In this document: positions 7,574 to 56,810 of the stretch, piece by piece
How the letters are laid out: every line of letters starts with the position of its first letter
Numbering within the stretch: position 1 is the stretch's first letter
IMG/VR virus record: IMGVR_UViG_3300028920_000022
Span: 372,001 to 436,000 of that record
DNA length: 64,000 nucleotides
Strand: one strand, 5' to 3'
Notes under the pieces: generated by a model
Database searches by the model: none
What the model was told of the DNA's origin: nothing
Seen by the model: only the letters and a program-made list of their open reading frames with translations
Position numbers and translations under genes: made by a program

Positions 7574-8598
7574 TGCGAATTCTTTATGCTGCAGGTAATC
7601 GAATTGGCGCCAATAGCCAACTTTGTCGTTTTGTAGACGCCGCAGCTCCTCAACATGAAATTAAAAAAGCTGCCTACCTCCAGGCTAGTGGCTCCATCCC
7701 TCATATCGATTGGACCCTTGACGCGCTGCATCATAATATAATTACGAACAAGTGCAGCAAGGAGTTATTGAATTTATTTGGGCATTCCGGGGTGCCCATG
7801 GTAAACATTTACAGTGTCACTACATTTTTCAAAGAAGTGGAGGAATTCGAGCCAGAGGTAGTGATAAGTGATGGGGAACCGATAGCGGCGCACATAGCCA
7901 AGAGTTTAAATATAAAATTATGGTATTGCAGCCCCATACATTTACTTGACGGGGTCAGGTGGGATAAAGGTCAATTAAGGTACACAACCTTCTTAAATAA
8001 AATGAGACAAAACTTAATAAGGTTTCCTGAGCCTGACCGTGCTTTCGTATATTCCCCCTTCGGAGATATCAAATTCCGTCCGTTCCTAAATTCTGGGTTT
8101 GAATGGATTACCCCATATTATTTAAAATCTGAACTTGGAAATAATAATTGCCTTGCCGTTATCAACGATTATAATAGATTTTCAGAGTTATCGAAAATAT
8201 TAAATGGTGCTGCAAATGATATTACATTATATTCTCCGTATAAGGAAGAGTTTTCGAACATGAAAACTGGGTTAATAGGGGATCTTAAGAAACATTTGGA
8301 AAAAAATAGTTATCAATCTATATTTACTACGGGGGAAACTAGTTATATTGCGGATGCATTTTACTCTGGTTGTAATATATGTGTTAGTCCTACATTGGGG
8401 GATGTGGAGACATTATTAAATGCGATTTTGGTAAAGGAATATAAATTAGGAACTGACATACATCAGGTAGAATTTATGGAAAGTTATGCTTTAGACGAAG
8501 TAGAAAAGGCATTAAACAAGGAACCGGAAACAAATTATTGGAGTTTACAAAATCGTCCATTTTTACACGAAGCATTAGTCGAGCTGAAAAAGCAATGA
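7570..8598 (+). CDS. GT-B glycosyltransferase-like protein (MJ1255-like), possibly divergent
   Basis: MRILYAAG N-terminus; FEPEVVISDGEP. Confidence 0.6.
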   Translation: MMRILYAAGNRIGANSQLCRFVDAAAPQHEIKKAAYLQASGSIPHIDWTLDALHHNIITNKCSKELLNLFGHSGVPMVNIYSVTTFFKEVEEFEPEVVISDGEPIAAHIAKSLNIKLWYCSPIHLLDGVRWDKGQLRYTTFLNKMRQNLIRFPEPDRAFVYSPFGDIKFRPFLNSGFEWITPYYLKSELGNNNCLAVINDYNRFSELSKILNGAANDITLYSPYKEEFSNMKTGLIGDLKKHLEKNSYQSIFTTGETSYIADAFYSGCNICVSPTLGDVETLLNAILVKEYKLGTDIHQVEFMESYALDEVEKALNKEPETNYWSLQNRPFLHEALVELKKQ

Positions 8599-8615
8599 TC
8601 TCAACTAATTGAGTT

Positions 8616-8786
8616 ATGTTACTTATACGTAGATTTAAAAAAGATGAAGTTCTTAAAATTGTAGCGGAATATGCATCTCGGTCATTACCCGAGGAGAAGC
8701 AGGGGGTTATAGAATCTCGGGAAACCAAGGATGGAGGGGTAGAGGTATATTTTATTGAAGAAGACAGAGAAAAATCGATTAATTGA
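8616..8786 (+). CDS. Small hypothetical protein (56 aa, not in the ORF track)
   Basis: MLLIRRFKKDEV...EKSIN* fills the gap and abuts the next ATG at 8788. Confidence 0.45.
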   Translation: MLLIRRFKKDEVLKIVAEYASRSLPEEKQGVIESRETKDGGVEVYFIEEDREKSIN

Positions 8787-9579: not shown

Positions 9580-10214
9580 ACAAAGTAACTACTAAAAAGA
9601 TTAGCACATATGAGTGTTTTGAAAAAACAATCAAACACCCCAAACATGGTACTATTATTTGTTCTGAAGGGTTTGTAAACGGCATAAAAACAGACCAAAG
9701 TTTTCGTTTAAAAAAGCCAAACCATGAAGGGTACGAGCCTGAAAGGATGACATTTATTTATTATGGTGGACCAATAGATACCCACAAAGTTAGCGAAACA
9801 CATTTTGATGATGATTGTAACTACGGTTTGACACAGGTTTTTGTTGAGGATTTAGAGAAGTTTTCAGATTTCAAAAACCTATATTGTCTCTGGATGAGCA
9901 TGGATAATAACATTTTTCGTTTAACTGATCCACGACCACTTCCTGTTGTAATGCGGTGTGAATTATGGCAAACCAAATATGATCTAGATGCCGCAGCTAA
10001 AAAACTTTCTTCTCGCAAAGACGTGAGGAATATTATACGTACCAACAACTGTGTACAGAATTGGGACATTTGCGGAAAACATAATTTGGTTTTTGATTAT
10101 TATTCTTCACAAAAAACTGTGTGTGATCTTAATGGTGTTATTTGTGAGCGCGACCGTATGATCGCAGACATAGTTGGTGTTGGAAAGTTTCGATATGAAG
10201 AAAAAGAAGACTAA
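9576..10214 (+). CDS. Hypothetical protein
   Basis: ATGA-coupled 212-aa ORF. Confidence 0.6.
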   Translation: MNKVTTKKISTYECFEKTIKHPKHGTIICSEGFVNGIKTDQSFRLKKPNHEGYEPERMTFIYYGGPIDTHKVSETHFDDDCNYGLTQVFVEDLEKFSDFKNLYCLWMSMDNNIFRLTDPRPLPVVMRCELWQTKYDLDAAAKKLSSRKDVRNIIRTNNCVQNWDICGKHNLVFDYYSSQKTVCDLNGVICERDRMIADIVGVGKFRYEEKED

Positions 10215-10628: not shown

Positions 10629-12098
10629 ATGCCCGCAAAAGTTCAAAAAACTCCTTTGCTTAAGGAAGGCGAATATACCATAGCCGATGTTTCAGATTGG
10701 AACTTTTTTGATCTTTCAGGCGAAAACGCCCACACTTTTGGCACGTCCAACAAACAATATCACATAGAAATGCACATAGGTAAAAATGGTAAGTGTCAGA
10801 TCTTTACCATGTTTGGTCCAACCGGGGGTACCCAAACTAAAAATTGGCGCTACTTTGACTCTGAAGTTGCCGCCCGTAAAGAATTGGCGTCAATGAAGAA
10901 AAAAAGAGTCAAAAAGAATTATAAAGAAATTAAAGTTGCCATTCGTGCTTACGGTACCGAAGAGGCTAAAAAGATCACTCAAGCTGTTGAGTTCAACAAC
11001 TCAGATATAAAACCCTCCAGCAATCTCCATAAAGAAACCCAACGATTAATGCGGGTTCTCTTTGGTGCAACCGAACACTTCGTTGTTACCACTTTGCGCT
11101 GCCCTCTGGGTCAATTAACCAATGAACAAGTAGATGAGGGTTATAAACGCCTAAATGAAGCAAAAAAATTAATTTCTAATGGTTCACCAAATGCTAAACG
11201 GATTGAAACACTTACCAACGAATTTTATGCTATTATCCCCCACAATTTAGGAGCCGGTGCGAGAGGTAAAATGATGAACCTCTTGCTGGATACTCCACAA
11301 AAGATTGCTCAAAAAGAATATGATTTAGAAACATTATTGGACGCCAAATCGGTTGGAGCTGCCCTGGAAAAGGGCTCAACCGTTGATGATCAATATAATG
11401 AATTGAATACCGATTTTGATTTTATTGATCATAACGATCCTTTATTTCAATGGGTAAATAGGATTGTTTTGGATACTCGGGCACACAACCATAATACTTT
11501 GGGTAAGATTACAGTATTGAATGCTTGGAAATATAATCGTCATGGCGAGAGAAACGTTTTTGAAAAGAGGATGAAAGAGATTGCCAAGGAGTGTAAAAAG
11601 CCGTTTACGCCTAAAGTTTTGAGGAATGCTGTTGAAAATCGGTTAGATATTCCAGATGGACAGGGAGGATTATATAAAAAGGCTAATGTGTTGCCATTAT
11701 TTCATGGAACCCGGACTCAGAACATTGCTGGAATTACGAAGAAGGGATTGTTGATAAGACCTTCGGGTGTGATTTTAGAAGGTTCATGCTACGGTAGTGG
11801 TGTTTATTATGCAAACAACAGTAGCAAAACGATCAACTATAGTAGTGTTCGGGGGGCTTATTATACCCACGGCAAAGACGATCGTGGTTATATATTCATA
11901 GTAGATTGCGTTCTAGGCGACACTTATGTTCCAACTACTGCAGCAAACTACACCAAGGGTAATATTTCCCCCAACCATTCAGTGTGGGCAAAGGGAGGAT
12001 ACTCTGGCGTAATTAATGATGAGTATGTGTTGTTGGACATAAATCAGCATAATATTAGATACTTAGTGGAGTTTACTTGCGGGAAAAATGGAATATAG
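10629..12098 (+). CDS. Poly(ADP-ribose) polymerase-like protein 1 (WGR + regulatory + catalytic domains)
   Basis: WGR-like N-terminus, CPLGQL, FYAIIPH regulatory domain, catalytic FHGT / YGSGVYYA / NDEYV (H-Y-E). Confidence 0.9.
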   Translation: MPAKVQKTPLLKEGEYTIADVSDWNFFDLSGENAHTFGTSNKQYHIEMHIGKNGKCQIFTMFGPTGGTQTKNWRYFDSEVAARKELASMKKKRVKKNYKEIKVAIRAYGTEEAKKITQAVEFNNSDIKPSSNLHKETQRLMRVLFGATEHFVVTTLRCPLGQLTNEQVDEGYKRLNEAKKLISNGSPNAKRIETLTNEFYAIIPHNLGAGARGKMMNLLLDTPQKIAQKEYDLETLLDAKSVGAALEKGSTVDDQYNELNTDFDFIDHNDPLFQWVNRIVLDTRAHNHNTLGKITVLNAWKYNRHGERNVFEKRMKEIAKECKKPFTPKVLRNAVENRLDIPDGQGGLYKKANVLPLFHGTRTQNIAGITKKGLLIRPSGVILEGSCYGSGVYYANNSSKTINYSSVRGAYYTHGKDDRGYIFIVDCVLGDTYVPTTAANYTKGNISPNHSVWAKGGYSGVINDEYVLLDINQHNIRYLVEFTCGKNGI

Positions 12099-16899: not shown

Positions 16900-17904
16900 A
16901 TGGACGTAATACCAGGATATACGTTTGACGATGTTCTTTTAATTCCTAAAAAATCTAATATAGAAAGCCGAGAAGATATCGATCTTTCGGTAAAATTTAG
17001 AAAAGGAATAGAGCTTAAGATTCCTATTATTTCCGCCAACATGAAAAATGTTACCGGACCTAAAATGGCACAAAAGATTGCCAAGCTTGGCGGGATGGCT
17101 ATACTGCATAGGTTTGTAGATGGCTTATATGATTTTGTAAAACAATATACCGATTCTTTGGTTATGCCAGAAGATGTTAATCATATTGGTGTTTCGGTTG
17201 GTATCCATGATTATGACAAGAAGTTGGTTGAACATGCCGTTGGGGCAGGGTGCAAAATAATTTGTGTAGACGTTGCACATGGACATCATGATAATTGTTT
17301 GAGAATGTGTGAGTATATTGCGGGTAACTTTCCTGATGTTTTGTTAATTGCCGGCAACATTTCTACTGCGGAGGGTGCATTAGATTTAGTCAATGTTGGA
17401 GCAGATGTAATTAAGGGTGGAGTCGGATCCGGATCGTTATGTTCTACACGTATTGAAACAGGAAATGGAGTTCCACAACTAACAGCTTTGGACAATATAT
17501 ATCAAGTTTTAAAAAATACCGATGTTGTGATTGTCTCAGATGGGGGTGTCAAAGTTGCCGGAGATCTAACTAAATGTTTAGTGTTTTCTCATGCTGTAAT
17601 GTTGGGTAATCTTCTAGCAGGAACCGATGAAGCTCCTGGTGAAATTATTCAAGTTGATGGCTTGGAATTTAAACAATATGCCGGAAGTTCTACTCATAAA
17701 TCAAAACACATTGAAGGTGTAATTGGATTAGTTCCTTATCGAGGTCCAGTAGAAAAAGTAATTACTAAACTAATGGAAGGTCTCCAAAGTGGTTGTTCTT
17801 ATCAAGGAGCAAAAAATTTAATTGAACTTAGAAAAGATCCAAAATTTGTTTCTATTTCTAATGCTGGTTTGATAGAAAGTAAACCACACGACGTAAGATA
17901 TTAA
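16900..17904 (+). CDS. IMP dehydrogenase / GMP reductase family protein (no CBS domains)
   Basis: TFDDVLLIP, DVAHGH, GVGSGSLCSTR catalytic Cys, SDGG. Confidence 0.9.
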   Translation: MDVIPGYTFDDVLLIPKKSNIESREDIDLSVKFRKGIELKIPIISANMKNVTGPKMAQKIAKLGGMAILHRFVDGLYDFVKQYTDSLVMPEDVNHIGVSVGIHDYDKKLVEHAVGAGCKIICVDVAHGHHDNCLRMCEYIAGNFPDVLLIAGNISTAEGALDLVNVGADVIKGGVGSGSLCSTRIETGNGVPQLTALDNIYQVLKNTDVVIVSDGGVKVAGDLTKCLVFSHAVMLGNLLAGTDEAPGEIIQVDGLEFKQYAGSSTHKSKHIEGVIGLVPYRGPVEKVITKLMEGLQSGCSYQGAKNLIELRKDPKFVSISNAGLIESKPHDVRY

Positions 17905-19067: not shown

Positions 19068-19655
19068 ATGATTCATTATTATATAATTGACGTAGAAACG
19101 AATGGTCTAAAAGCTGGATATCATGAGGTAACACAGATTTCGATCATACGTTGTTCAGACAGAAACCAACTAAATAGATACATCAAACCTGAACATCCCA
19201 ATCGTACAACGCCAAAAGCATTAGAAGTGACGGGTAGAACTTACGCCGATCTTTCTAAAGGGGATGATAAAGAAACGGTTGTGGAGTTTTGTGATGCTTT
19301 TTTTCAAGAGGATTCAGCTACTCCAGAAGAACGATGTATTGTGGGGCATAATATCCACCGTTTTGATAAGAAGTTTTTGCATGCTTTGTGGAAATCGGTT
19401 GGTAAGAAATTTCCTGCCAATTTGTGGTTAGACACATTACCTTCCACCAAAAAGTTTGCTACCAACCAGGGAATATATTCGGAGAATTTTAAGTTAGATT
19501 CTTGTTTGAAAGTGTTTGGTGTCAAGCCCAGACCTGGCGGACACAATGCTGTGGTGGATACTCAAAACACGTATATTTTGCTCAAGAGATTAGAAAAGAG
19601 CGGAATAGACCTACTTCCGTTTACCCAAAGATCTGTACATATGGTCGATGCCTGA
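19068..19655 (+). CDS. DEDDh 3'-5' exonuclease, second paralog
   Basis: DVETNG, HNIHRFD, HNAVVD. Confidence 0.85.
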   Translation: MIHYYIIDVETNGLKAGYHEVTQISIIRCSDRNQLNRYIKPEHPNRTTPKALEVTGRTYADLSKGDDKETVVEFCDAFFQEDSATPEERCIVGHNIHRFDKKFLHALWKSVGKKFPANLWLDTLPSTKKFATNQGIYSENFKLDSCLKVFGVKPRPGGHNAVVDTQNTYILLKRLEKSGIDLLPFTQRSVHMVDA

Positions 19656-19875
19656 GGAAATCATGGGAAGCATAACTAAAAAAATACGCAAGAAGGCTGA
19701 AAAATATCAAAAAGCCCTAGAAATTGTTGAGAGCAGTTTAGATAACATAGAGATGCCTGAAAGTTTTGAAACGTATGATTTGGCTGATTCTGTTAAATCA
19801 GAAATTGAAAAAGCCAAAATCGATCGTCGTCAAGCAAGAAACAGGCGAAAGGCGGTGAAGCGTGGTCGTAGATAG
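19648..19875 (+). CDS. Small basic hypothetical protein
   Basis: Overlapping coupled ORF. Confidence 0.5.
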
Positions 19876-20410
19876 AACAAAGGGAGTTACTTTGTGGTTG
19901 ACCGGGTTATCTGGCGCAGGTAAAACTACTGTTGCCCAAGCGCTAGAAACTCGCTTGATTAATTATGATATCAATTGCTATCGGCTGGATGGTGACGAAC
20001 TACGTACAGGGCTGTGTTCTGGGCTGGGTTTTAGTAAAGAAGATCGCTCAGAAAATATAAGAAGAGTTGCGGAGGTTTCTAAATTATTCGCAAATGCAGG
20101 TTTAGTTTCTATAGTAAGTTTAATCAGTCCATATATTGAAGACAGGGACAATTGTCGAAAAATTCATGAAAACGCAAATTTACCATTTGTTGAGGTTTAT
20201 GTTGATGCCCCATTAAATGTATGCGAAAGTAGAGATCCGAAAGGATTATATAAAAAAGCCAGAGCTGGAGAAATAAAAAAGTTCACCGGAGTAAGTGATC
20301 CATACGAGGGACCATTGAATCCTGAAATAATATTACGAACAGCTGAAAATTCAATTAATGACTGTGTAGAATTATGTTTGAAATATTTGCAAGAAAATCG
20401 CTTGACATAG
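19862..20410 (+). CDS. cysC: Adenylyl-sulfate kinase
   Basis: [43 protein letters not shown]. Confidence 0.95.
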
Positions 20411-20447: not shown

Positions 20448-22064
20448 ATGACTACATCATCTGATTTTGTGAAAAGTTTAATTGGGGACCAGGAAAAGGC
20501 AGAGGTTTTAGAGCCTTACCTGAAAAAGAACGAAGATTGGCGGTTCAGTGTTGCTCGTGTAATGCTAACCGGAATTCTCAAGAACCAGTTTTACCGATCC
20601 GCAGAAGATGCAGCCAAAGAAGCGTTGCCATTAATGCTTATGGCTGCAAAGAAGGATCCCGAATTCCTATTAAAGGCTGCCGCTTTTGCACGTGAAGCTA
20701 ATATGAAGGGAATGGTCAAACTGGGTCTGGCAGCTTTAGCAACTCAGGCTCCAGCCCAATTTTTAAATGATAATCGGGCTACTATTGTTGGTTTGTTAGG
20801 AACTTTTCACCCAGGACAATTACTTCAATTTGTTGAACTAATGAAGTCAAAAGTTTTGGGCAGGGGTTTTGGTGCCCGCTCTCAGAAATGGGTACAGTCT
20901 GTAATGCAGTCTTGGCGCCCAGAAAAGGTAGAAGAATATACCCTAAAATATCCAACTGCATACAAGGTTCTTCTGCGTCTTGTTCACCCATCATATAGTG
21001 ATGTGCGAAGTGGGTTGGTTCGATATTTATTGGACCCCTCAGAAAAATACCCAGAATATGGCACACCAGCGGGCAAGATTCAAAAAGCGGTTGAGCGCAT
21101 CAAAACCTCTAACGATGATGCGTATATTGCCAAAACCATGTTGGAATATGAAATTCCTTGGGATGTTGTCAAAGGATTCCATTCTATTAATGGAGATGTT
21201 GGTTTAGCAATGTTAACCCAGATGGGGCTTTCTGCTTTACTGTTAAACACACGCAGTTTAGAGAAAAATGGTGTTTTAAACACCCCGGATGGAGTCCAAG
21301 CGTTTGCTCTAAAGTTAAATGAGGTTAAAAACGGCAGATCTATTCCCATTGATTTTGCCAAACCATATATTTATTCTGAGAACCATCAGGTCAAGGAGTT
21401 ATTAGTAAAGGCGATTGTTGACACCTTGGGCAAAGAAATGCCTCATATTGAGGGAAGAAGCATTGGTGTCAGCGTTGATATTTCTGGTTCGATGAGCAAC
21501 GAACCATTACAAACTGCTGGGCTGTTAGCAATTCCATTTTTGAAAGCACGCAATTTGTGGTTTACCACGTTTGATACGCAGTGCTATGAAGAAGGAACCC
21601 AGGTACGCGGTCGAAGTTGGTATGGCGCTTTATCTGAGGGAAAATATATTTGTCCACCACTGAAGGGTTTGGAGCCGGAACAGCAGGTAAAGAATCTGTT
21701 AAGTTTGCGGGTAAATGGTGGAACTAATGTTTCTTCGTCTTTGGACAGAGCGTTGCAAAACAATATTAATTTGGATTTGCATGTTCTAATTACCGATGAG
21801 CAGCAAAATGCCGGAACTCCGTTGATGAGTGTTTGGCGTGAATATAAGCGTCGAATTAATCCACGAGCCGAGTTGTGGATAATCAATGCTACAAACTATG
21901 TGTGGCATTCTGCGGATTTCGATGATCCGAGCGTTACCGTTTATCAGACCATGACGCCTGCAATTTTTAAGAATCTACGATTTTTTGGTCAGGATTTAGT
22001 TTCTGCTATTAAATCGTATGATTTGAATAAGGTTCGTAGGTTGGGTAAGTTTAAGCCGGATTGA
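20448..22064 (+). CDS. Ro60/Rsr-like TROVE + vWA RNA-binding protein
   Basis: QFY and DPEFLLKAAAFARE N-terminal TROVE pattern, LLRLVHP, PWD, ALLLNTR; vWA MIDAS VDISGSM, GGTN, ITDEQ. Confidence 0.85.
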   Translation: MTTSSDFVKSLIGDQEKAEVLEPYLKKNEDWRFSVARVMLTGILKNQFYRSAEDAAKEALPLMLMAAKKDPEFLLKAAAFAREANMKGMVKLGLAALATQAPAQFLNDNRATIVGLLGTFHPGQLLQFVELMKSKVLGRGFGARSQKWVQSVMQSWRPEKVEEYTLKYPTAYKVLLRLVHPSYSDVRSGLVRYLLDPSEKYPEYGTPAGKIQKAVERIKTSNDDAYIAKTMLEYEIPWDVVKGFHSINGDVGLAMLTQMGLSALLLNTRSLEKNGVLNTPDGVQAFALKLNEVKNGRSIPIDFAKPYIYSENHQVKELLVKAIVDTLGKEMPHIEGRSIGVSVDISGSMSNEPLQTAGLLAIPFLKARNLWFTTFDTQCYEEGTQVRGRSWYGALSEGKYICPPLKGLEPEQQVKNLLSLRVNGGTNVSSSLDRALQNNINLDLHVLITDEQQNAGTPLMSVWREYKRRINPRAELWIINATNYVWHSADFDDPSVTVYQTMTPAIFKNLRFFGQDLVSAIKSYDLNKVRRLGKFKPD

Positions 22065-23638: not shown

Positions 23639-23697
23639 TGTAACGCGAGGTTGATCTTTCATCTGCATTTTGTGGGTCTTCCGATTATTTCGTTACA
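23639..23697 (+). ncRNA. Y-RNA-like small RNA 1
   Basis: TGTAACG-C(bulge)-GA...TT-CGTTACA terminal stem, GATC/GGTC inner stem, TTTCATC loop, U-tract after. Confidence 0.65.
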
Positions 23698-23706
23698 TTT
23701 TCTTTT

Positions 23707-23782
23707 TGTGCATGGTGAGACTTGAACTTACAAATCCTCGGAAGATAGCGGTTTTTTAGACCGCCGTGTTTTCGCCATGTAC
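23707..23782 (-). pseudogene. Degenerate tRNA-Leu-type element with truncated D-arm (anticodon loop CTAAAAA)
   Basis: On -: GTACATG/CATGCAC-A acceptor, GCGGT/ACCGC anticodon stem, long variable arm, GTAAG-TTCAAGT-CTCAC T-arm. Confidence 0.55.
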
Positions 23783-23791
23783 ACATTTCCA

Positions 23792-23824
23792 AACACATGA
23801 TTTCTCAACACATGATTTCTCAAC
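23792..23824 (+). repeat. 15-bp tandem duplication AACACATGATTTCTC x2.2
   Basis: Read directly from the sequence. Confidence 0.9.
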
Positions 23825-23970
23825 TAAAACACTGGGGTTATTTTTCACTAGGAACAACGTTATTTTTGATACCATTTATTTTAATGCTAAGACCACCGTG
23901 GTATCTTAATGCGATGATGATGGTTGGTTTGGTAATGGTAATCCAAAGTACTAAGGTTGGAGAGAAGTAA
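23797..23970 (+). CDS. Small two-TM membrane protein (57 aa, not in the ORF track)
   Basis: MISQHMISQLKHWGYFSLGTTLFLIPFILMLRPPWYLNAMMMVGLVMVIQSTKVGEK*; no clear RBS. Confidence 0.4.
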   Translation: MISQHMISQLKHWGYFSLGTTLFLIPFILMLRPPWYLNAMMMVGLVMVIQSTKVGEK

Positions 23971-23999
23971 TTTCTACGCATATTTAGGATTCAGATTTG

Positions 24000-24060
24000 G
24001 GACGCGAGATTAGATCTTTCATCATTCATAGATATTTCGGGTCTAGTCGTTTTTTCGTCC
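24000..24060 (+). ncRNA. Y-RNA-like small RNA 2
   Basis: GGACG-C-GA...TT-CGTCC; 9-bp inner stem GATTAGATC/GGTCTAGTC; TTTCATC loop. Confidence 0.7.
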
Positions 24061-24065
24061 ATTTT

Positions 24066-24153
24066 GCGTTGTTCGTCTAAGTTAAGACATCCTTGTTAGA
24101 GCTTCTAAGCTATTACACAGGAAGATAGAGTATCGAATCTCTGCGACGCGCTA
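24066..24153 (+). ncRNA. tRNA-like element with expanded anticodon arm
   Basis: GCGTTGT/GCGACGC acceptor plus G-CTA end, GTCT/AGAC D-stem, TCCT...AGGA long arm, AGAG-TATCGAAT-CTCT T-like arm. Confidence 0.55.
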
Positions 24154-24154
24154 G

Positions 24155-24218
24155 GTAACGCGAAGTTAGATCTTTCATCATTTTCCAAGGTAAACGGGTC
24201 TAACTGTTTTTTCGTTAC
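24155..24218 (+). ncRNA. Y-RNA-like small RNA 3
   Basis: GTAACG-C-GA...TT-CGTTAC; inner stem AGTTAGATC/GGTCTAACT; TTTCATC loop. Confidence 0.7.
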
Positions 24219-24290
24219 ACTAATTTGACCCCTTTAAGACCATAAAAGGTTTGTTTTCGAAATACATTTAGACACAACATATCTTTTTAA

Positions 24291-24321
24291 AAGGCATGCC
24301 CTTTAAGGGTGTGCTTTTTTT
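24291..24321 (+). terminator. Intrinsic terminator after the ncRNA array
   Basis: GCATGCCC-TTTAA-GGGTGTGC followed by T7. Confidence 0.7.
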
Positions 24322-24325
24322 GTAT

Positions 24326-24411
24326 TGCGGGAATGTAGCAAAGGCGGCTAGCCAGTCTCATAAGCTGGCGTCCATTGATCGCGAAGGGTTCGATTCCCTC
24401 TCCCGCAACCA
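24326..24411 (+). tRNA. tRNA with CAT anticodon (Met or Ile2), encoded CCA, long variable region
   Basis: TGCGGGA/TCCCGCA-A-CCA; CCAGT-CTCATAA-GCTGG; GGTTCGATTCC. Confidence 0.85.
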
Positions 24412-24468: not shown

Positions 24469-25875
24469 ATGGGAAAATTGAAGGTGTGGAAAGTTGGCGC
24501 AGCTGGAGAACCCAGTTTTCCTGCCAATTTTGAGGTGGCTAAAAAAGCCGTTCTCCAAGTTACAGATATTAAAACAAATCGTAATAAGTATTATGCCATA
24601 GAACTACACTCTGCTGGCAATAAATATAGAGTGTTTACTCATTATGGTCGAACAGATGATCTGGACACGAATCCTAATGCTGGGGTGCGCGAGGTTCGTT
24701 ACGGCAACTTGTCTGAATGTGAAGCAACCTATCATCAGATATATAGTCAAAAAACTAGCGCAAGAAAAGGATATAAGGAACTTAGCTTAGCATCTTCGCG
24801 TATTGGTTCGTCTCAATCGGTTGGTAAATCTAGCGGACATGTTGATGACAAAACGCTTGAAAAACTAAACAACGGTAACAAGAAAGTGATAAAAAACAAA
24901 GTTTCTACACTTTCTCCCGTTGTACAAGATTTTGTTTCTTATATTTATGCTGAAGCCACTAATGCCCTAACTAGCACAATTAATGCCAGCATTACCGCTA
25001 ATGGTATCGAAACGCCTCTTGGTGTTTTGACACTGGGTCAGATTGATAAGGGGCAAAAGATTTTGGATGAGCTTTATGATTTATTCAATTCAAAAAAGAG
25101 CCAATCAATACGTGACCATATGGTAGAACTGAGTGGTGAGTTTTATACAGTAATTCCTCACAGAATAGGCAGAACTAGGGCTGCTGTAGAAGCTGCTGTT
25201 ATTGATAGTTTAGTAGATTTTAATGCTAAGCAAGACACATTACAACTTATGCGAGACATGTTAAGTGTTTCGGGTAAAGACTCCCAGGTACTTATTAACC
25301 CTGAAATTGATAAGAAATATAATGCTTTGGGTTGCGAAATTAAAACTGTAGATAATAAAAAGTATCAAGAATTGAAGGATTATGTAGAGAAATCACAAAT
25401 AAAAACCAGAAATATTAAAGTAAAGAATATATATTCATTATGCAGACCAGAAGAACAAAAGGTTTTTGCTGATAATATTTCAAATAAACGATTACTTTTT
25501 CACGGTTCTAGGGCAAAAAACTGGGTAGGTATTCTTTCCCGTGGTTTGTTGCTTCCTAAGATTGTGGTTAGCTTGGGTGTAAACCGAACTGACGCAGGTT
25601 GGCTTGGAAATGGTATTTATTTCGGAGATGCTGTTTGCACTACATTATACTACACGTCTCCTGGAAGGCAGAGAAACACCCGGATGATGGCGATAGCGAA
25701 TGTAGCATTAGGAAAGATGAAGGATTTTAATAGAATTACGTATGGATTAAAAGGACCACCCGCTGGATATCATAGTTGTCATGGTGTACGTGGAACCTCA
25801 TTTGCAGATGATGAATATGTAATTTATGACCAGAAACAGCAGAAACTTGAGTATTTAGTGGAGTATGTGTCATGA
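24469..25875 (+). CDS. Poly(ADP-ribose) polymerase-like protein 2 (WGR + regulatory + catalytic domains)
   Basis: NRNKYY...YGR WGR domain, TPLGVL, FYTVIPH, LFHGSR / LGNGIYF / DDEYVIY. Confidence 0.92.
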   Translation: MGKLKVWKVGAAGEPSFPANFEVAKKAVLQVTDIKTNRNKYYAIELHSAGNKYRVFTHYGRTDDLDTNPNAGVREVRYGNLSECEATYHQIYSQKTSARKGYKELSLASSRIGSSQSVGKSSGHVDDKTLEKLNNGNKKVIKNKVSTLSPVVQDFVSYIYAEATNALTSTINASITANGIETPLGVLTLGQIDKGQKILDELYDLFNSKKSQSIRDHMVELSGEFYTVIPHRIGRTRAAVEAAVIDSLVDFNAKQDTLQLMRDMLSVSGKDSQVLINPEIDKKYNALGCEIKTVDNKKYQELKDYVEKSQIKTRNIKVKNIYSLCRPEEQKVFADNISNKRLLFHGSRAKNWVGILSRGLLLPKIVVSLGVNRTDAGWLGNGIYFGDAVCTTLYYTSPGRQRNTRMMAIANVALGKMKDFNRITYGLKGPPAGYHSCHGVRGTSFADDEYVIYDQKQQKLEYLVEYVS

Positions 25876-28863: not shown

Positions 28864-30006
28864 ATGATTAAATCTATGTTTGATGATGATCTTTACAAGT
28901 TCACAATGCAACAGATTATTTTGCATTTCTATGGAGACAAGAAAGCCGAATATAGATTTAAAAATCGTGGGAACACCAAGTTTAATGACAAGTTTGCTGA
29001 TAGACTTCAGGATGAGATAGAGAACCTTTCTCTGTTGGTTCCCGACAAATATGAACTAGAAGAGTTTGCGAAGATTCCGTTTATTAGAGGAGATTATGTA
29101 GAGTACTTATCAAGGTATCGTTATGATCCACGGCAGGTACAGTTTTCTTTGCGAGATGGAGATTTAGATCTTCGTATAAAGGGTCCATGGCATTCCGCTA
29201 TATTGTGGGAAGTCAAACTGATGGCGCTAATTAGTGAGATTTATTTTGCCCAACATAAAGCTACCTGGACAATGGATGGTCAAAAAGAAAAGCTTGATCG
29301 AAAAGCTCTTCTTTTAGAGGCGGTAGATGCTAAGTATGCCGATTTTGGTACTCGTCGCAGGCGTAGTTTTGAGGTTCAAGATTTGGTGGTAAGAAACCTT
29401 GTCAACAAACATGGGTTCCTGGGTACATCAAATGTACATTTAGCCATTAAACATGGTGTTTCCGCCGTGGGCACTATGGCTCACGAATGGGTTCAGGGTG
29501 TATCGGTAGCTGAGGATTTATTGCATGCTAATGGTATTATGATGGACAGATGGAATTCTTTTTATCAGGGACAGTTGGGTGTTGCTTTAACTGATACATT
29601 TACCACTCCGCACTTTTTATACAACAGTTTTGATGCCAAGCGCGCTGCTGCATTTTCTGGAGTTAGACAAGATTCGGGCGATCCGTTTTGGTTTGCGAAT
29701 CAGGTGATAAATCGATACCTACAACTAGGAATTAACCCCAAAACCAAAACCATTATTTTTAGCGATAGTTTAGATGCCAAAACTGCCGCCAAACTACAGA
29801 TCCATTGTGATGGAAAGATTAACTGTGCTTTTGGCATTGGCACCAATCTAACTAATGATTTTGACAATTTGAAACCAATTAATATGGTGATCAAGTTGTG
29901 GTCAATTGACGGAATTCCGGTAGTAAAGTTGTCAGATAATGCTGGCAAAAACAATGGCGATCTATGGATGCTTGGGGTTGCGAAGAGGGTGTTTGGGGTA
30001 TCATGA
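28864..30006 (+). CDS. pncB: Nicotinate phosphoribosyltransferase
   Basis: DDDLYKFTMQQ, DFGTRRR, GTSN, GTMAHEW, RQDSGDP, FGIGT, VKLSD. Confidence 0.93.
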   Translation: MIKSMFDDDLYKFTMQQIILHFYGDKKAEYRFKNRGNTKFNDKFADRLQDEIENLSLLVPDKYELEEFAKIPFIRGDYVEYLSRYRYDPRQVQFSLRDGDLDLRIKGPWHSAILWEVKLMALISEIYFAQHKATWTMDGQKEKLDRKALLLEAVDAKYADFGTRRRRSFEVQDLVVRNLVNKHGFLGTSNVHLAIKHGVSAVGTMAHEWVQGVSVAEDLLHANGIMMDRWNSFYQGQLGVALTDTFTTPHFLYNSFDAKRAAAFSGVRQDSGDPFWFANQVINRYLQLGINPKTKTIIFSDSLDAKTAAKLQIHCDGKINCAFGIGTNLTNDFDNLKPINMVIKLWSIDGIPVVKLSDNAGKNNGDLWMLGVAKRVFGVS

Positions 30007-31033: not shown

Positions 31034-32050
31034 ATGTCAAAGCGAAATCTGGTTAAGTCTCGTGTTCGTGGAGCTATTTTGGGAACCGCAATTGGAGACG
31101 CCCTAGGTGCTCCATTTGAAATGATGGAAAAAGAACAAATACATAACCTATTGCCGGTTCCGTGGACATGGGGACAACAGCAGAAGGGTATAGTGTTTTC
31201 CGAAAACTTTGCTCATCCAAATCTAGGAATCGGTCAATGGACCGATGATACTCAATTAATGCGCACTATTTTGTGGTCGATTATTGACGATCATGCCATT
31301 GATCCATATGGTATTGCTAAATATACCAGTGAGGTTTTTGAGAAAGAACAGCTTCGAGGATGGAGCAAATCCGTAATTTCTGCAGCAAAACGACTTTCTC
31401 GTGGGGTTCCGTGGTACGATTCTGCCAACGAATCCATCGGTATTGGCAACGGTATCGCCATGAAAGCTGCTCCTTTGGGTATTTACCTGGCTAAATACCT
31501 GAAAAACGATTACAACTATTCTACCCATGAGTTTGGCGCCAACCTTAGACATGCCATTGTGTCTATTGTTGGTGTAGGACAAATTACCCACCATGAGCTG
31601 GGAATCATGGGTGGCGTAATGCAAAGTGTCTTAGTTGGTCTTTCGTTCAATAATGTCAAGAACAAGAAGTTGATTCTTAAGGTTCTGGGCAATATTGAAA
31701 AGGAATTTTCTGGTGCCACACGGTTTACAGATAAGCTAAGAATTGCGCTAAAATACAATAGTATTGCGGATGTGGCTGATAATATTGGAACAGACAGCAA
31801 GGCAGACAAATCCTGGGTAACTGCAGCTGCTGTTTTTCTCAACACCAAGAGGCGCAGTGATGCTGCAAAACGCATGATGGAGCTAATCTGCCAGGGCGGC
31901 GATTGTGATACTACCGGAGCAATGTTCGGAGCCTTAGCTGGAGCCCGTTGGGGAATTTCTGCTTTTCCCACGAATCTCAGGAAAGAAGTCGAGGCAAGCA
32001 AGGAACTGTTAAAGTTAGCAGATGGTTTGTATGGAGTGGTTTCTACTTGA
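31034..32050 (+). CDS. ADP-ribosylglycohydrolase (DraG/ARH family)
   Basis: GTAIGDALGAPFE, WTDDT, GNGIAMK, ITH, GGDCDTTGAMFGALAGA. Confidence 0.92.
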   Translation: MSKRNLVKSRVRGAILGTAIGDALGAPFEMMEKEQIHNLLPVPWTWGQQQKGIVFSENFAHPNLGIGQWTDDTQLMRTILWSIIDDHAIDPYGIAKYTSEVFEKEQLRGWSKSVISAAKRLSRGVPWYDSANESIGIGNGIAMKAAPLGIYLAKYLKNDYNYSTHEFGANLRHAIVSIVGVGQITHHELGIMGGVMQSVLVGLSFNNVKNKKLILKVLGNIEKEFSGATRFTDKLRIALKYNSIADVADNIGTDSKADKSWVTAAAVFLNTKRRSDAAKRMMELICQGGDCDTTGAMFGALAGARWGISAFPTNLRKEVEASKELLKLADGLYGVVST

Positions 32051-55580: not shown

Positions 55581-56810
55581 CCTAATCAAAAAAGAAGTCC
55601 TCTACTTTTAAGTGGAGGATGAATTTTTTCTTCCGTATCTACGCATAATTATTCATATTTTTGAAGATATGTTGGTTTACAAATACAGACTCTATCCCAG
55701 TAAAAAGCAGCAAGAAAAACTGTGGATACATGCGAATAAATTGAATTGGATCTATAACCAGTTTCTAGATCAGAAAATTAACACATATAAGAATACAAAA
55801 AAGAATCTCTCCAGATACGATCTACAAGCGCAATTACCGAAACTTAAACAACGAGATCCAGTAATTAAAGAAATACATTCGCAAGTTTTGCAACAGGTGC
55901 CCAAGCGTTTAAACCAAGCATTTAAAGATTTTTACAAAAGAGGAAACAAAGGATTTCCAAACTTCAGATCTAGTTTGAACTTCTTCGGTATTTGTTATCC
56001 TCAGAGCGGATACTCTATATCAGGAAATGTCTTTAGAACGAAAATATACGGTAAAATGTCGTTTCTCAAATATCGCCCTATTCGTGGGAATATTCGACAA
56101 GTGTATATTACTAGTGAGAAAAATGGCTGGTTCATTTGTATAACAACTGACTATGAAAAAGATATTCCGAAAGCAACGGATAAGATCGGTATTGATGTAG
56201 GATTAAAGGATTTGGTTGTAACATCCGAAGGAAAACATATTAAAAACTGTAGTCATGCGAAATATTTTGACAAACAGATAGCGAAGATATCGTCAAGAAT
56301 AGATAAGAAAAAGAATAAGAAATCCAGATCTCGAAAGTTTCTGTGTAAAGTTCGGCGCAGATTGTATGATGTGAAAAAACGTAAGATTAACGATTTTCAA
56401 CATAAAGTCTCGAAGAGACTTAGTTCCGAATGCGATACAATATTTGCTGAGAATTTGAGTGTAAAGAAGATGAGTGAAGGAGAATTGCGGAACTTAAACA
56501 AGAGCATTCGAAATGCCAAATTAGCTAATTTCATTTCGTATCTATCATACAAGACCAACACATTGGTGTTGGTCAATCCGAAGAACACAAGCAAGACATG
56601 TAATCATTGTGGGAATATTCGAGAGAATTTGAAGTTATCCGAGAGGACGATTACATGTGACAAATGTGGTGAAGTATATGATAGGGACGAAAATGCCGCT
56701 AAGAACGTTTATTGCCTGGGACAGGCTATTCAGGATCTACAGTTAGAACCTGAGTATGCTGAATTATTTACGATTCAGGAAGCTCTTGCCTTAAGGCAAG
56801 AGTAGTTCAC
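55581..56810 (+). mobile_element. Non-autonomous IS200/IS605-family element (tnpB only)
   Basis: Left hairpin GTCCTCTACTT/AAGTGGAGGAT; right hairpin GCTCTTGCC/GGCAAGAGT followed by AGTTCAC; no tnpA. Left boundary is 55581 or 55587. Confidence 0.8.
55669..56805 (+). CDS. tnpB: RNA-guided endonuclease TnpB
   Basis: YKYRLYP HTH, IGIDVG (RuvC-I), FAENL (II), CNHC/CDKC Zn finger, DRDENAAKN (III). Confidence 0.92.
   Translation: MLVYKYRLYPSKKQQEKLWIHANKLNWIYNQFLDQKINTYKNTKKNLSRYDLQAQLPKLKQRDPVIKEIHSQVLQQVPKRLNQAFKDFYKRGNKGFPNFRSSLNFFGICYPQSGYSISGNVFRTKIYGKMSFLKYRPIRGNIRQVYITSEKNGWFICITTDYEKDIPKATDKIGIDVGLKDLVVTSEGKHIKNCSHAKYFDKQIAKISSRIDKKKNKKSRSRKFLCKVRRRLYDVKKRKINDFQHKVSKRLSSECDTIFAENLSVKKMSEGELRNLNKSIRNAKLANFISYLSYKTNTLVLVNPKNTSKTCNHCGNIRENLKLSERTITCDKCGEVYDRDENAAKNVYCLGQAIQDLQLEPEYAELFTIQEALALRQE

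What the first reader, a model, noticed from the sequence alone, without database searches (positions are those of the whole stretch)
24066..24153. tRNA-like spacer wedged exactly between small RNAs 2 and 3
Seen: 7-bp acceptor, D-stem, T-like arm and a G-CTA end, but an anticodon arm of ~33 nt instead of 17. It starts 5 nt after RNA 2 and ends 1 nt before RNA 3. Established: YrlA Y RNAs contain tRNA-mimic modules, and tRNA folds direct RNase P and 3' processing. Inference: it punctuates the precursor to release the Y-like RNAs, or is a separately encoded tRNA mimic or decoy.
Basis: partly seen in the sequence, partly recalled or inferred. Interest (0 to 1): 0.6.

Follow-up and report, generated by a model that had tools for sequence, protein, structure and literature searches.

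The report
Degenerate tRNA module joined to phage Y RNAs
A huge uncultivated phage that encodes a Ro60 protein carries, between two of its small Y-type RNAs, a conserved tRNA-shaped element that can no longer decode; its relatives show the same tRNA-then-Y-RNA unit again and again, which suggests that tRNA-processing enzymes cut out, or tRNA mimicry equips, these RNAs.

Summary
Window 24066-24153 (+) folds into a cloverleaf with a 7-bp acceptor stem, a 4-bp D stem, a 33-nt "anticodon" arm, a 4-bp T stem with loop UAUCGAAU, discriminator G and a CUA tail. It starts 5 nt after Y-like hairpin 2 and directly abuts hairpin 3.

ARAGORN and Rfam do not call it. Homologues in related Ro60-encoding huge phages keep every stem through compensatory changes: 99% of pair cells are paired against 58% after shuffling, and 19 of 19 pairs show double changes. 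The anticodon arm varies freely (18-33 nt, loops of 6-12 nt), so the element derives from tRNA but does not decode.

Across the clade I curated 20 junctions with the same layout. A tRNA or tRNA-like element is followed by N73 and C(C/U)A, then at once by a Y hairpin. Some of the upstream elements are good tRNA-Met or tRNA-Pro genes.

Best explanation (about 0.5): the element is a tRNA-type processing handle. RNase P would cut at its 5' end and tRNA 3'-end enzymes at its 3' end, setting the ends of the flanking Y RNAs. Main rival (about 0.3): it stays joined to the downstream hairpin as a tandem counterpart of the nested YrlA tRNA mimic. No processing was tested. I rate it a new variant of known kinds.

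The parts
24066..24153 (+). Non-decoding tRNA-like module: acceptor 24066-72/24143-49; D arm 24075-88; extended 'anticodon' arm 24090-24122; T arm 24127-42; discriminator G 24150; CUA tail 24151-53
   Evidence: The free-energy minimum is a cloverleaf. The fold is specific to the + strand. Homologues were found with covariance models and show covariation. ARAGORN and Rfam do not call it.
24000..24060 (+). Y-like hairpin 2 (basal stem GGACG/CGUCC, inner 9-bp helix, conserved ACGCG and GAUCUUUCAUC), followed by the AUUUU spacer 24061-24065
24154..24226 (+). Y-like hairpin 3 (basal stem GUAACG/CGUUAC, 24155-24218) with its 3' tail; it begins directly after the CUA of the tRNA-like module
   Evidence: The junction rule is shown.
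23640..23696 (+). Y-like hairpin 1. It starts about 7 nt after a possible -10 element (TAGCGT, 23627-32), which lies 17 nt after TTGACA (23604-09)
   Evidence: TTGACA-N17-TAnnnT in the same position is conserved in L132 and L137. The consensus promoter scan did not list it because the -10 is weak, so the promoter is an inference.
24289..24319 (+). Terminator-like hairpin followed by a T run, closing the Y2 / tRNA-like / Y3 unit
   Evidence: An equivalent hairpin follows the last Y in L132, L137, L123 and L125.
20448..22064 (+). Ro60/Rsr homologue (538 aa), the presumed protein partner of the Y hairpins
   Evidence: Pfam vWA_Ro60, weak match. The family profile matches Rsr 2nvo at E = 2.9e-19 and Ro60 1yvp/9nen. 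NCBIfam Rsr at E = 1.5e-10, below its cut-off.
19068..19655 (+). DEDDh 3'-5' exonuclease (Pfam RNase_T family), conserved just upstream of Ro60 across the clade; a candidate trimming enzyme
   Evidence: Synteny is shown. NCBIfam gives only generic DEDD exonuclease matches.

Best explanation
The element is a degenerate tRNA gene that no longer decodes. It is kept as the tRNA-shaped half of a repeated unit, [tRNA or tRNA-like]-N73-C(C/U)A-[Y RNA hairpin], found in the Ro60 loci of a clade of huge phages.

Its most likely job is to act as a processing handle:
1. The Y2 / tRNA-like / Y3 stretch is transcribed as one RNA.
2. RNase P recognises the acceptor/T-arm stack and the elbow and cuts at 24065/24066. 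This frees Y2 with a short U-rich 3' tail.
3. A tRNA 3'-end activity (an RNase Z-type cut after G24150 or close to the CUA, followed by exonuclease trimming) frees Y3 with a 5' end at the base of its Ro60-binding stem.

Shown: the structure, its conservation, its descent from tRNA, the loss of anticodon constraints, and the fixed junction. Inferred: co-transcription, both cleavages, and which enzymes make them.
For: 1. The cloverleaf is conserved by covariation, while the anticodon arm varies in length (33, 22, 18, 18 and 24 nt) and in its loop (6-12 nt, with no 7-nt loop carrying U33). The parts under selection are the ones that RNase P, RNase Z and the CCA-adding enzyme read.
2. I curated 20 junctions from 13 distinct loci. 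Each has a 7-bp acceptor stem (6 bp plus a 6-bp T stem in one case), then N73, then CCA (13 cases), CUA (6) or CAG (1), then the Y stem within 0-2 nt. The nucleotide just before the element is mostly U (two end coordinates in that table were corrected by eye).
3. The distance to the upstream Y varies from 4 to 26 nt.
4. In relatives the same slot holds tRNAs scoring 51-69 bits on Rfam's tRNA model: tRNA-Pro in L125 and tRNA-Met in L123. L123's tRNA-Met is detectably related to the window element. If these are used in translation, the junction has to be cut.
5. Internal Y RNAs of a multi-copy unit cannot get their 5' ends from transcription start. Y1, the first in the array, sits right after a conserved promoter-like TTGACA-N17-TAnnnT.
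6. Relatives encode a CCA-adding-type nucleotidyltransferase and a DEDDh exonuclease next to Ro60, and one encodes an MBL-fold protein whose best matches are RNase Z.
7. Precedents exist. M. smegmatis YrlA is cut by RNase P and receives CCA (PMC4201824). [quoted passage not shown]
Against: - No expression or cleavage data exist, and the phage is uncultivated.
- The fixed 3' junction with a variable 5' spacer fits a permanently joined tRNA-like/Y RNA equally well.
- The D-loop sequence AAGUUA is conserved in five lineages. That is more constraint than a bare RNase P/Z substrate needs.
- The T stem has 4 bp with an 8-nt loop, and the D loop lacks GG, so a canonical elbow is not assured.
- Y hairpins followed by U runs might end by termination rather than cleavage.
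- The window itself contains no CCA-adding enzyme or RNase Z gene.
- The RNase Z-like and CCA-enzyme matches in relatives score far below the curated cut-offs.
Confidence: 0.5

Rival explanations
1. Tandem Y RNA. RNase P (or nothing) trims the 5' side, but the tRNA-like module stays covalently joined to the downstream hairpin. The result is a two-part RNA of about 155 nt, with a Ro60-binding stem and a tRNA mimic in series. It would be a functional counterpart of nested YrlA, linking Ro60 to a protein that binds tRNA.
For: - The four-nucleotide linker (N73 plus C(C/U)A) to the downstream Y is nearly constant at 20 junctions, while the upstream spacing varies.
- The window, L132 and L137 have only simple Y hairpins and no nested YrlA-type RNA. 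Chen et al. report at least one tRNA-like Y RNA per species (PMC4201824), so here the spacer modules would be the only tRNA mimics.
- The D arm and D loop are conserved beyond what cleavage alone needs.
- C(C/U)A could be kept as an RNase P recognition element without ever being a free end (inference from established RNase P biology).
Against: - Relatives that have nested YrlA-type RNAs also have the tandem units (L123, L125, L152, L213, L214), so the tandem unit is not simply a replacement.
- Good tRNA-Met and tRNA-Pro genes occupy the same slot and would be useless for translation if never released.
- No binding data exist.
Confidence: 0.3
2. Free-standing tRNA mimic or decoy. Once released and given CCA, the module acts by itself. 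For example it could soak up host factors or defence toxins that recognise the acceptor end or elbow of tRNAs. Its adjacency to the Y RNA would then only be a way of co-expressing it.
For: - Stems and the D and T loops are conserved although decoding is lost.
- The CCA/CUA tail is kept.
- The neighbourhood is rich in genes typical of phage-host conflict: two PARP-like genes, NAPRTase and an ADP-ribosylglycohydrolase.
- Jumbo phages are thought to supply tRNAs and RNA repair against attacks on tRNA (PMC7824862).
Against: - Nothing points to a specific target.
- A decoy for anticodon nucleases is excluded, because the anticodon arm is not conserved.
- This reading does not explain the exact junction with the Y stem.
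- It can coexist with the processing-handle explanation rather than replace it.
Confidence: 0.12
3. Decaying tRNA pseudogene with no function of its own, present only because of ancestry.
For: ARAGORN and Rfam do not call it. It lacks G18G19, has a non-standard T loop and carries an inserted anticodon arm.
Against: All four helices are kept by compensatory changes across lineages whose stem nucleotides are only 21-45% identical to the window's. The junction geometry is conserved. Neutral decay would break the stems.
Confidence: 0.05

Closest known systems
YrlA-type bacterial and phage Y RNAs (Chen et al. 2014, PMC4201824; structure preprint 10.1101/312249, seen in the search list only, not read)
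   Same: Both are tRNA-like domains (acceptor-like stem, D arm and T arm, with no decoding function) linked to a Ro60-binding stem. Both are encoded within 4 kb of a Ro60 gene on the same strand. M. smegmatis YrlA is cut by RNase P and receives CCA.
   Different: In YrlA the tRNA-like domain is nested inside the Ro-binding stem and circularly permuted (V, T, closed acceptor stem-loop, D). Here the module has the normal tRNA strand order and an open acceptor stem with N73-CUA. It keeps an oversized anticodon arm and lies outside, 5' of, the Y hairpin. Nested YrlA-type RNAs do occur in relatives (L123, L125, L152) but not in this window.
MHV68 tRNA-miRNA transcripts (tRNA-like unit directly upstream of pre-miRNA hairpins, released by RNase Z; PMC3482243)
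   Same: A viral, non-decoding tRNA-like unit is fused directly to a downstream structured hairpin RNA. tRNA-processing enzymes are proposed to define the ends of the hairpin.
   Different: MHV68 is a eukaryotic herpesvirus using Pol III transcripts, and the cargo is pre-miRNA. Here the virus is a phage, the cargo is Y-type RNA for a Ro60 protein, and the units form arrays with Y hairpins on both sides.
tRNA punctuation of polycistronic transcripts and tRNA-like 3'-end signals (mitochondrial transcripts, MALAT1 mascRNA, plant tRNA-snoRNA; from my own knowledge, not checked here)
   Same: A tRNA-shaped element is used as an RNase P/Z cleavage signal between other RNAs, and features not needed for cleavage degenerate.
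   Different: These are different organisms and cargos. None is linked to Ro60 or Y RNA.
Thermus phage phiLo Ro60 with Yrl1/Yrl2 (PMC12135203)
   Same: A phage-encoded Ro60 with neighbouring Y-like RNAs. Its structure (9kop/9l5y) is a weak match to this Ro60 family.
   Different: No tRNA-like spacers or tRNA-Y units appear in the passages I read. That Ro60 is only distantly related (E = 1.1e-5).

Membership tests
Canonical decoding tRNA | Called by tRNA finders (ARAGORN; Rfam RF00005 at 29 bits or more) | tested here: not met
   ARAGORN finds nothing at 24066-24153. Rfam gives no hit at gathering score or at E up to 10. The homologues L213 7947-8018 and L216 5431-5508 do pass, with 42.7 and 44.2 bits.
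Canonical decoding tRNA | 5-bp anticodon stem with a 7-nt loop carrying U33 and an anticodon | tested here: not met
   The arm here is 33 nt and irregular. The homologues have loops of 6, 8, 12 and 12 nt with no shared triplet.
Canonical decoding tRNA | 7-bp acceptor stem, D stem, T stem, discriminator and a CCA or CCA-less 3' end | tested here: met
   The acceptor stem has 7 bp, the D stem 4 bp and the T stem 4 bp (not 5), followed by G73 and CUA. All stems covary.
Canonical decoding tRNA | Conserved elbow nucleotides (G18G19 in the D loop; T54-Psi55-C56 in a 7-nt T loop) | tested here: not met
   The D loop AAGUUA has a single G. The T loop UAUCGAAU has 8 nt; it contains UCGAA plus one extra base.
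YrlA Y RNA (tRNA-like domain) | Encoded within about 4 kb of a Ro60 orthologue on the same strand | tested here: met
   Ro60 lies at 20448-22064 (+), and the element is 2 kb downstream on the same strand.
YrlA Y RNA (tRNA-like domain) | tRNA-like domain nested within the Ro-binding stem, in the order V-T-AS-D with a closed acceptor stem-loop | tested here: not met
   The order here is acceptor 5' strand, D, AC, V, T, acceptor 3' strand, and the element lies between two hairpins that each close on themselves. Each hairpin's basal stem covaries with its own partner strand.
YrlA Y RNA (tRNA-like domain) | GNCGAAN0-1G motif near the 5' end | tested here: not met
   The motif is absent from 24066-24153. 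The flanking hairpins carry a related but different motif, ACGCGA(G/A).
YrlA Y RNA (tRNA-like domain) | Substrate of tRNA enzymes (TruB, DusA, RNase P, CCA-adding enzyme) | not testable with these tools
   This needs biochemistry.
tRNA-like processing handle (MHV68 type) | A non-decoding tRNA-like unit directly 5' of a structured hairpin RNA, in one transcript | tested here: met
   Adjacency is 0-1 nt here and is conserved at 20 junctions. That they form a single transcript is inferred from the lack of room for a promoter and from a shared terminator.
tRNA-like processing handle (MHV68 type) | Cleavage by RNase P and/or RNase Z at the borders of the tRNA-like unit | not testable with these tools
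   No expression data are available, and the phage is known only from metagenomes.

The most novel reading that the evidence does not exclude
The tRNA-like module and the Y hairpin after it form one mature RNA. This would be a new 'tandem' class of Y RNA in huge phages, in which a non-decoding tRNA mimic is tied through N73-C(C/U)A to a Ro60-binding stem. The phage Ro60 particle would then be directed to, or would compete for, host proteins that bind tRNA during infection. This architecture would have arisen separately from the nested, permuted YrlA design.
Probability: 0.3. Interest if true: 0.8.

Novelty: new variant of a known kind. Interest (0 to 1): 0.62.

Why it matters
Why bacterial Y RNAs mimic tRNA is an open question. 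This clade offers a natural comparison. The same Ro60-binding stem occurs in three forms: with a nested tRNA-like domain, with a tRNA-like module fused in front, and with a real tRNA fused in front.

If the modules are processing handles, this would, as far as I could find, be the first phage case of tRNA punctuation used to make arrays of Ro60 partner RNAs. It would also explain how the internal Y RNAs get exact 5' ends. If the modules stay attached, they define a second, independently built kind of tRNA-mimic Y RNA.

Either way the cassette is short, at about 700 nt. It can be tested by expression in a laboratory host with standard RNase P, RNase Z and Ro60 assays.

Tried and rejected
- **Known-family calls:** ARAGORN and Rfam, at gathering score and at E up to 10, gave nothing for the element. 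No Rfam Y-RNA or YrlA family hit appeared in the window or in 12 relatives.
- **Similarity to deposited phages:** blastn of the region and tblastn of the Ro60 protein found nothing. The clade is known only from metagenomes.
- **Loose DNA pattern for the Y hairpin:** the scan of viral contigs returned about 120 chance matches. The one I checked (L073) lies in coding sequence.
- **Other strand:** rejected. The reverse complement folds no better than shuffles. G.U pairs would become A.C mismatches. The Y motif never occurs on the minus strand in any relative.
- **tRNA with an intron in the anticodon loop:** rejected. The homologues share no anticodon or loop geometry, and the insert is far too short for the group I introns known from bacterial and phage tRNA genes (the latter point from my own knowledge).
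- **Cross-pairing of the Y2 3' strand with the Y3 5' strand to enclose the element, YrlA-style:** rejected. Each hairpin's basal stem covaries with its own partner (GGACG/CGUCC against GUAACG/CGUUAC; 38 of 41 Y elements have 6/6 own-strand basal pairs).
- **Automated acceptor-stem search upstream of every Y:** too noisy to use. I replaced it with curated coordinates.
- **MAFFT alignment of the five homologues:** not aware of structure. I replaced it with covariance-model alignments.
- **The same tRNA-then-Y rule in 64 loci with distant Ro60 (22-28% identity):** no clear cases.
- **Two review papers on bacterial Y RNAs:** not held in the library.

Full report
**Source and context**

The window is part of IMGVR_UViG_3300028920_000022, a 458,729-bp viral contig from a metagenome. 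All genes around the finding lie on the + strand:
- GMP reductase/IMPDH, 16900-17904
- a DEDDh exonuclease of the Pfam RNase_T family, 19068-19655
- APS kinase, 19862-20410
- a 538-aa Ro60 homologue, 20448-22064
- a WGR/PARP_reg/PARP protein, 24469-25875
- NAPRTase, 28864-30006
- an ADP-ribosylglycohydrolase, 31034-32050

The Ro60 assignment rests on several results. Pfam vWA_Ro60 matches weakly. A profile of 24 family members matches D. radiodurans Rsr (2nvo) at E = 2.9e-19, vertebrate Ro60 at about 1e-14, and the Thermus phage phiLo TROVE protein at 1e-5. This family has no match in the deposited phage genomes searched.

**The small-RNA cluster**

Between 23600 and 24420 there are three copies of a hairpin of about 60 nt: 23640-23696, 24000-24060 and 24155-24218. 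They share ACGCG in the 5' strand, the motif GAUCUUUCAUC, GGGUCU in the 3' strand, a U-rich internal loop, and a basal stem that covaries (GUAACG/CGUUAC against GGACG/CGUCC).

The motif CGCG-N5-15-(A/U/C)UUCAUC occurs 41 times (distinct copies) downstream of Ro60 in the window and its relatives, always on the Ro60 strand. Of these, 38 have 6/6 basal pairs with compensatory changes at the outer positions. The spans fall into two size classes:
- 53-69 nt: simple hairpins like those in the window.
- 82-135 nt: in the cases I read (L123, L125, L152, L214), the stem encloses a canonical T arm (GGUUCGAAUCC type), a closed stem-loop and a D-like arm. This is the published YrlA layout (PMC4201824).

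**The element itself**

The fold is specific to the + strand. It persists when Y2, the element and Y3 are folded as one RNA. Taken alone, the energy z-score is only -1.95. ARAGORN and Rfam do not call it.

**Homologues**

I collected relatives through the Ro60 protein. L137 (Ro60 80% identical) has, in the same slot, a 77-nt element with these properties:
- the same D loop (AAGUUA) and T loop (UAUCGAAU)
- every stem changed in a compensatory way
- a 22-nt anticodon arm
- the tail G-CCA

L132 element B (Ro60 81% identical), L213 and L216 (64-65% identical) carry further homologues. Their anticodon arms are 18, 18 and 24 nt, and their tails are A-CUA, G-CCA and G-CUA.

The covariance-model searches went as follows:
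- A model built from the window sequence alone finds L137 at E = 3.6e-11 and the tRNA-Met(CAU) of L123 at E = 0.003.
- After one iteration it also finds L213, L216, L132-B, L152 and tRNA-Pro of L125.
- On that eight-sequence alignment, 99.3% of pair cells are standard pairs against 58.5% in shuffles.
- All 19 pairs have changes on both sides.
- The slid controls give 41-48% paired.

The alignment is fitted to the model, which favours the structure, but the margin is large. Each sequence also folds to the cloverleaf by itself. Rfam's tRNA model passes its gathering score on the L213 and L216 homologues (42.7 and 44.2 bits). The lineage is therefore derived from tRNA, and the window copy is one of its more degenerate members.

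None of the five close homologues has a 7-nt anticodon loop with U33 or a shared anticodon, so the element does not decode.

**The general rule**

In this clade a tRNA or tRNA-like element precedes a Y stem with no spacer. Twenty curated junctions from 13 distinct loci show a 7-bp acceptor stem, then N73, then CCA (13 cases), CUA (6) or CAG (1), then the Y stem (two end coordinates were corrected by eye). The upstream partners include:
- good tRNAs: L125 tRNA-Pro at 69 bits and L123 tRNA-Met at 61 bits
- elements called tRNA-Lys or tRNA-Ile whose loops have A at position 33
- clearly non-decoding modules with long arms, such as L132-A at 94 nt and L215 at 95 nt

The distance to the Y upstream of each element varies from 4 to 26 nt and is U-rich. 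I did not find the rule in 64 loci with distant Ro60 homologues. I also did not find it described in the papers I could search.

**Mechanism**

The conserved parts (acceptor stem, T arm, D arm, N73, C(C/U)A) are what RNase P, RNase Z and the CCA-adding enzyme recognise. The anticodon arm, which those enzymes do not read, is unconstrained. That enzyme specificity is established knowledge and was not tested here.

Real tRNAs in the same slot must be cut from the Y RNA if they are to work in translation. Internal Y RNAs cannot take their 5' end from a promoter, whereas Y1 sits right after a conserved TTGACA-N17-TAnnnT. The consensus promoter scan did not list that site because its -10 is weak.

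Relatives encode near Ro60 a nucleotidyltransferase whose best match is the CCA-adding enzyme. One relative encodes an MBL-fold protein whose best match is RNase Z. Both score below the curated cut-offs.

I therefore favour a processing-handle role at about 0.5.

The fixed downstream junction, the conserved D loop, and the absence of any nested YrlA-type RNA in the window, L132 and L137 keep a permanently joined "tandem Y RNA" alive at about 0.3. Neutral decay (0.05) is contradicted by the covariation.

**Verdict**

This is a new variant of known kinds (the tRNA mimicry linked to Y RNAs, and tRNA-like processing handles), seen as a conserved tRNA-then-Y unit in uncultivated huge phages.

Noticed in passing
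window 23707-23790 (+): A second structured element lies right after Y1. It has a 7-bp closing stem (GUGCAUG/CAUGUAC), and its G.U pairs favour the + strand. It contains a terminator-like hairpin at 23748-23764. Rfam's tRNA model gives 20.9 bits on the minus strand (E = 0.15). It is absent from L132 and L137. It could be an odd tRNA-like element or the terminator of Y1.
   Followed up: partly
window 23978-23998 (+); L132 about 9750-9769; L137 about 7901-7920: A 21-nt motif, GCATATTT(A/T)(A/G)GATT(C/T)AGATTT, is conserved immediately upstream of Y2 in three relatives while its flanks diverge. It occurs only once in the window. It may be a phage promoter or a processing site that sets the Y2 5' end where no tRNA-like module is present.
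   Followed up: partly
window 24326-24411 (+); L132 10218-10308: ARAGORN calls an 86-nt tRNA-Met(CAU) with a long variable arm and an encoded ACCA end, starting 6 nt after the terminator-like hairpin. Rfam gives only tRNA-Sec at 26.8 bits in the window, but 42.8 bits on the tRNA model for the 91-nt L132 copy. A long variable arm is unusual for a Met/Ile-type anticodon.
   Followed up: partly
window 10629-12098, 24469-25875, 28864-30006, 31034-32050: The window holds two PARP-like proteins (PARP_reg plus PARP; the second also has a WGR domain), NAPRTase and an ADP-ribosylglycohydrolase. Together they form an NAD+/ADP-ribose module flanking the Ro60/Y-RNA locus. PARP or NAPRTase follows the Y array in several relatives.
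   Followed up: partly
L123 8606-8740 and 8750-8868; L125 about 8608-8722; L152 1772-1910; L214 8091-8220: These are nested YrlA-type Y RNAs. They have the same ACGCG...UUCAUC stem as the window's simple hairpins but enclose a canonical T arm, a closed stem-loop and a D-like arm. Rfam gave no Y-RNA family hit for them.
   Followed up: partly
L152 about 1455-1540 and L132 9837-9930: The same hairpin GUUGG-UGAAACC-CCA(A/G)C appears as the apical hairpin of a Y RNA in L152 and as the T arm of tRNA-like element A in L132. This hints that modules are exchanged between Y RNAs and the tRNA-like spacers.
   Followed up: no
L213 8106-8180, L214 8016-8090, L215 7902-7976, L216 5602-5676: These elements are called tRNA-Lys(UUU) or tRNA-Ile(UAU), score 51-55 bits on Rfam's tRNA model and are fused to a Y hairpin. 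All have the anticodon loop UAU(U/A)UAA with A rather than U at position 33, and a D loop without GG. They may be mimics too.
   Followed up: no
window 23797-23970 (+): A 57-aa hydrophobic ORF lies between Y1 and Y2. It has no Pfam match and is absent from L132 and L137, where the spacer is short. It may not be a gene.
   Followed up: partly
window 55612-56805 (+); L216 3775-4995 (-): A TnpB/Cas12f-like gene (OrfB_IS605 plus the TNB domain) is present in the window. In L216 a similar gene sits between the Ro60 operon and the Y/tRNA array.
   Followed up: no
window 19862-20410 (+): A strong APS kinase match (229 bits) lies directly upstream of Ro60. Relatives have an AAA_33 kinase-like gene in that position, which may be a nucleotide or polynucleotide kinase working with the RNA module.
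   Followed up: no
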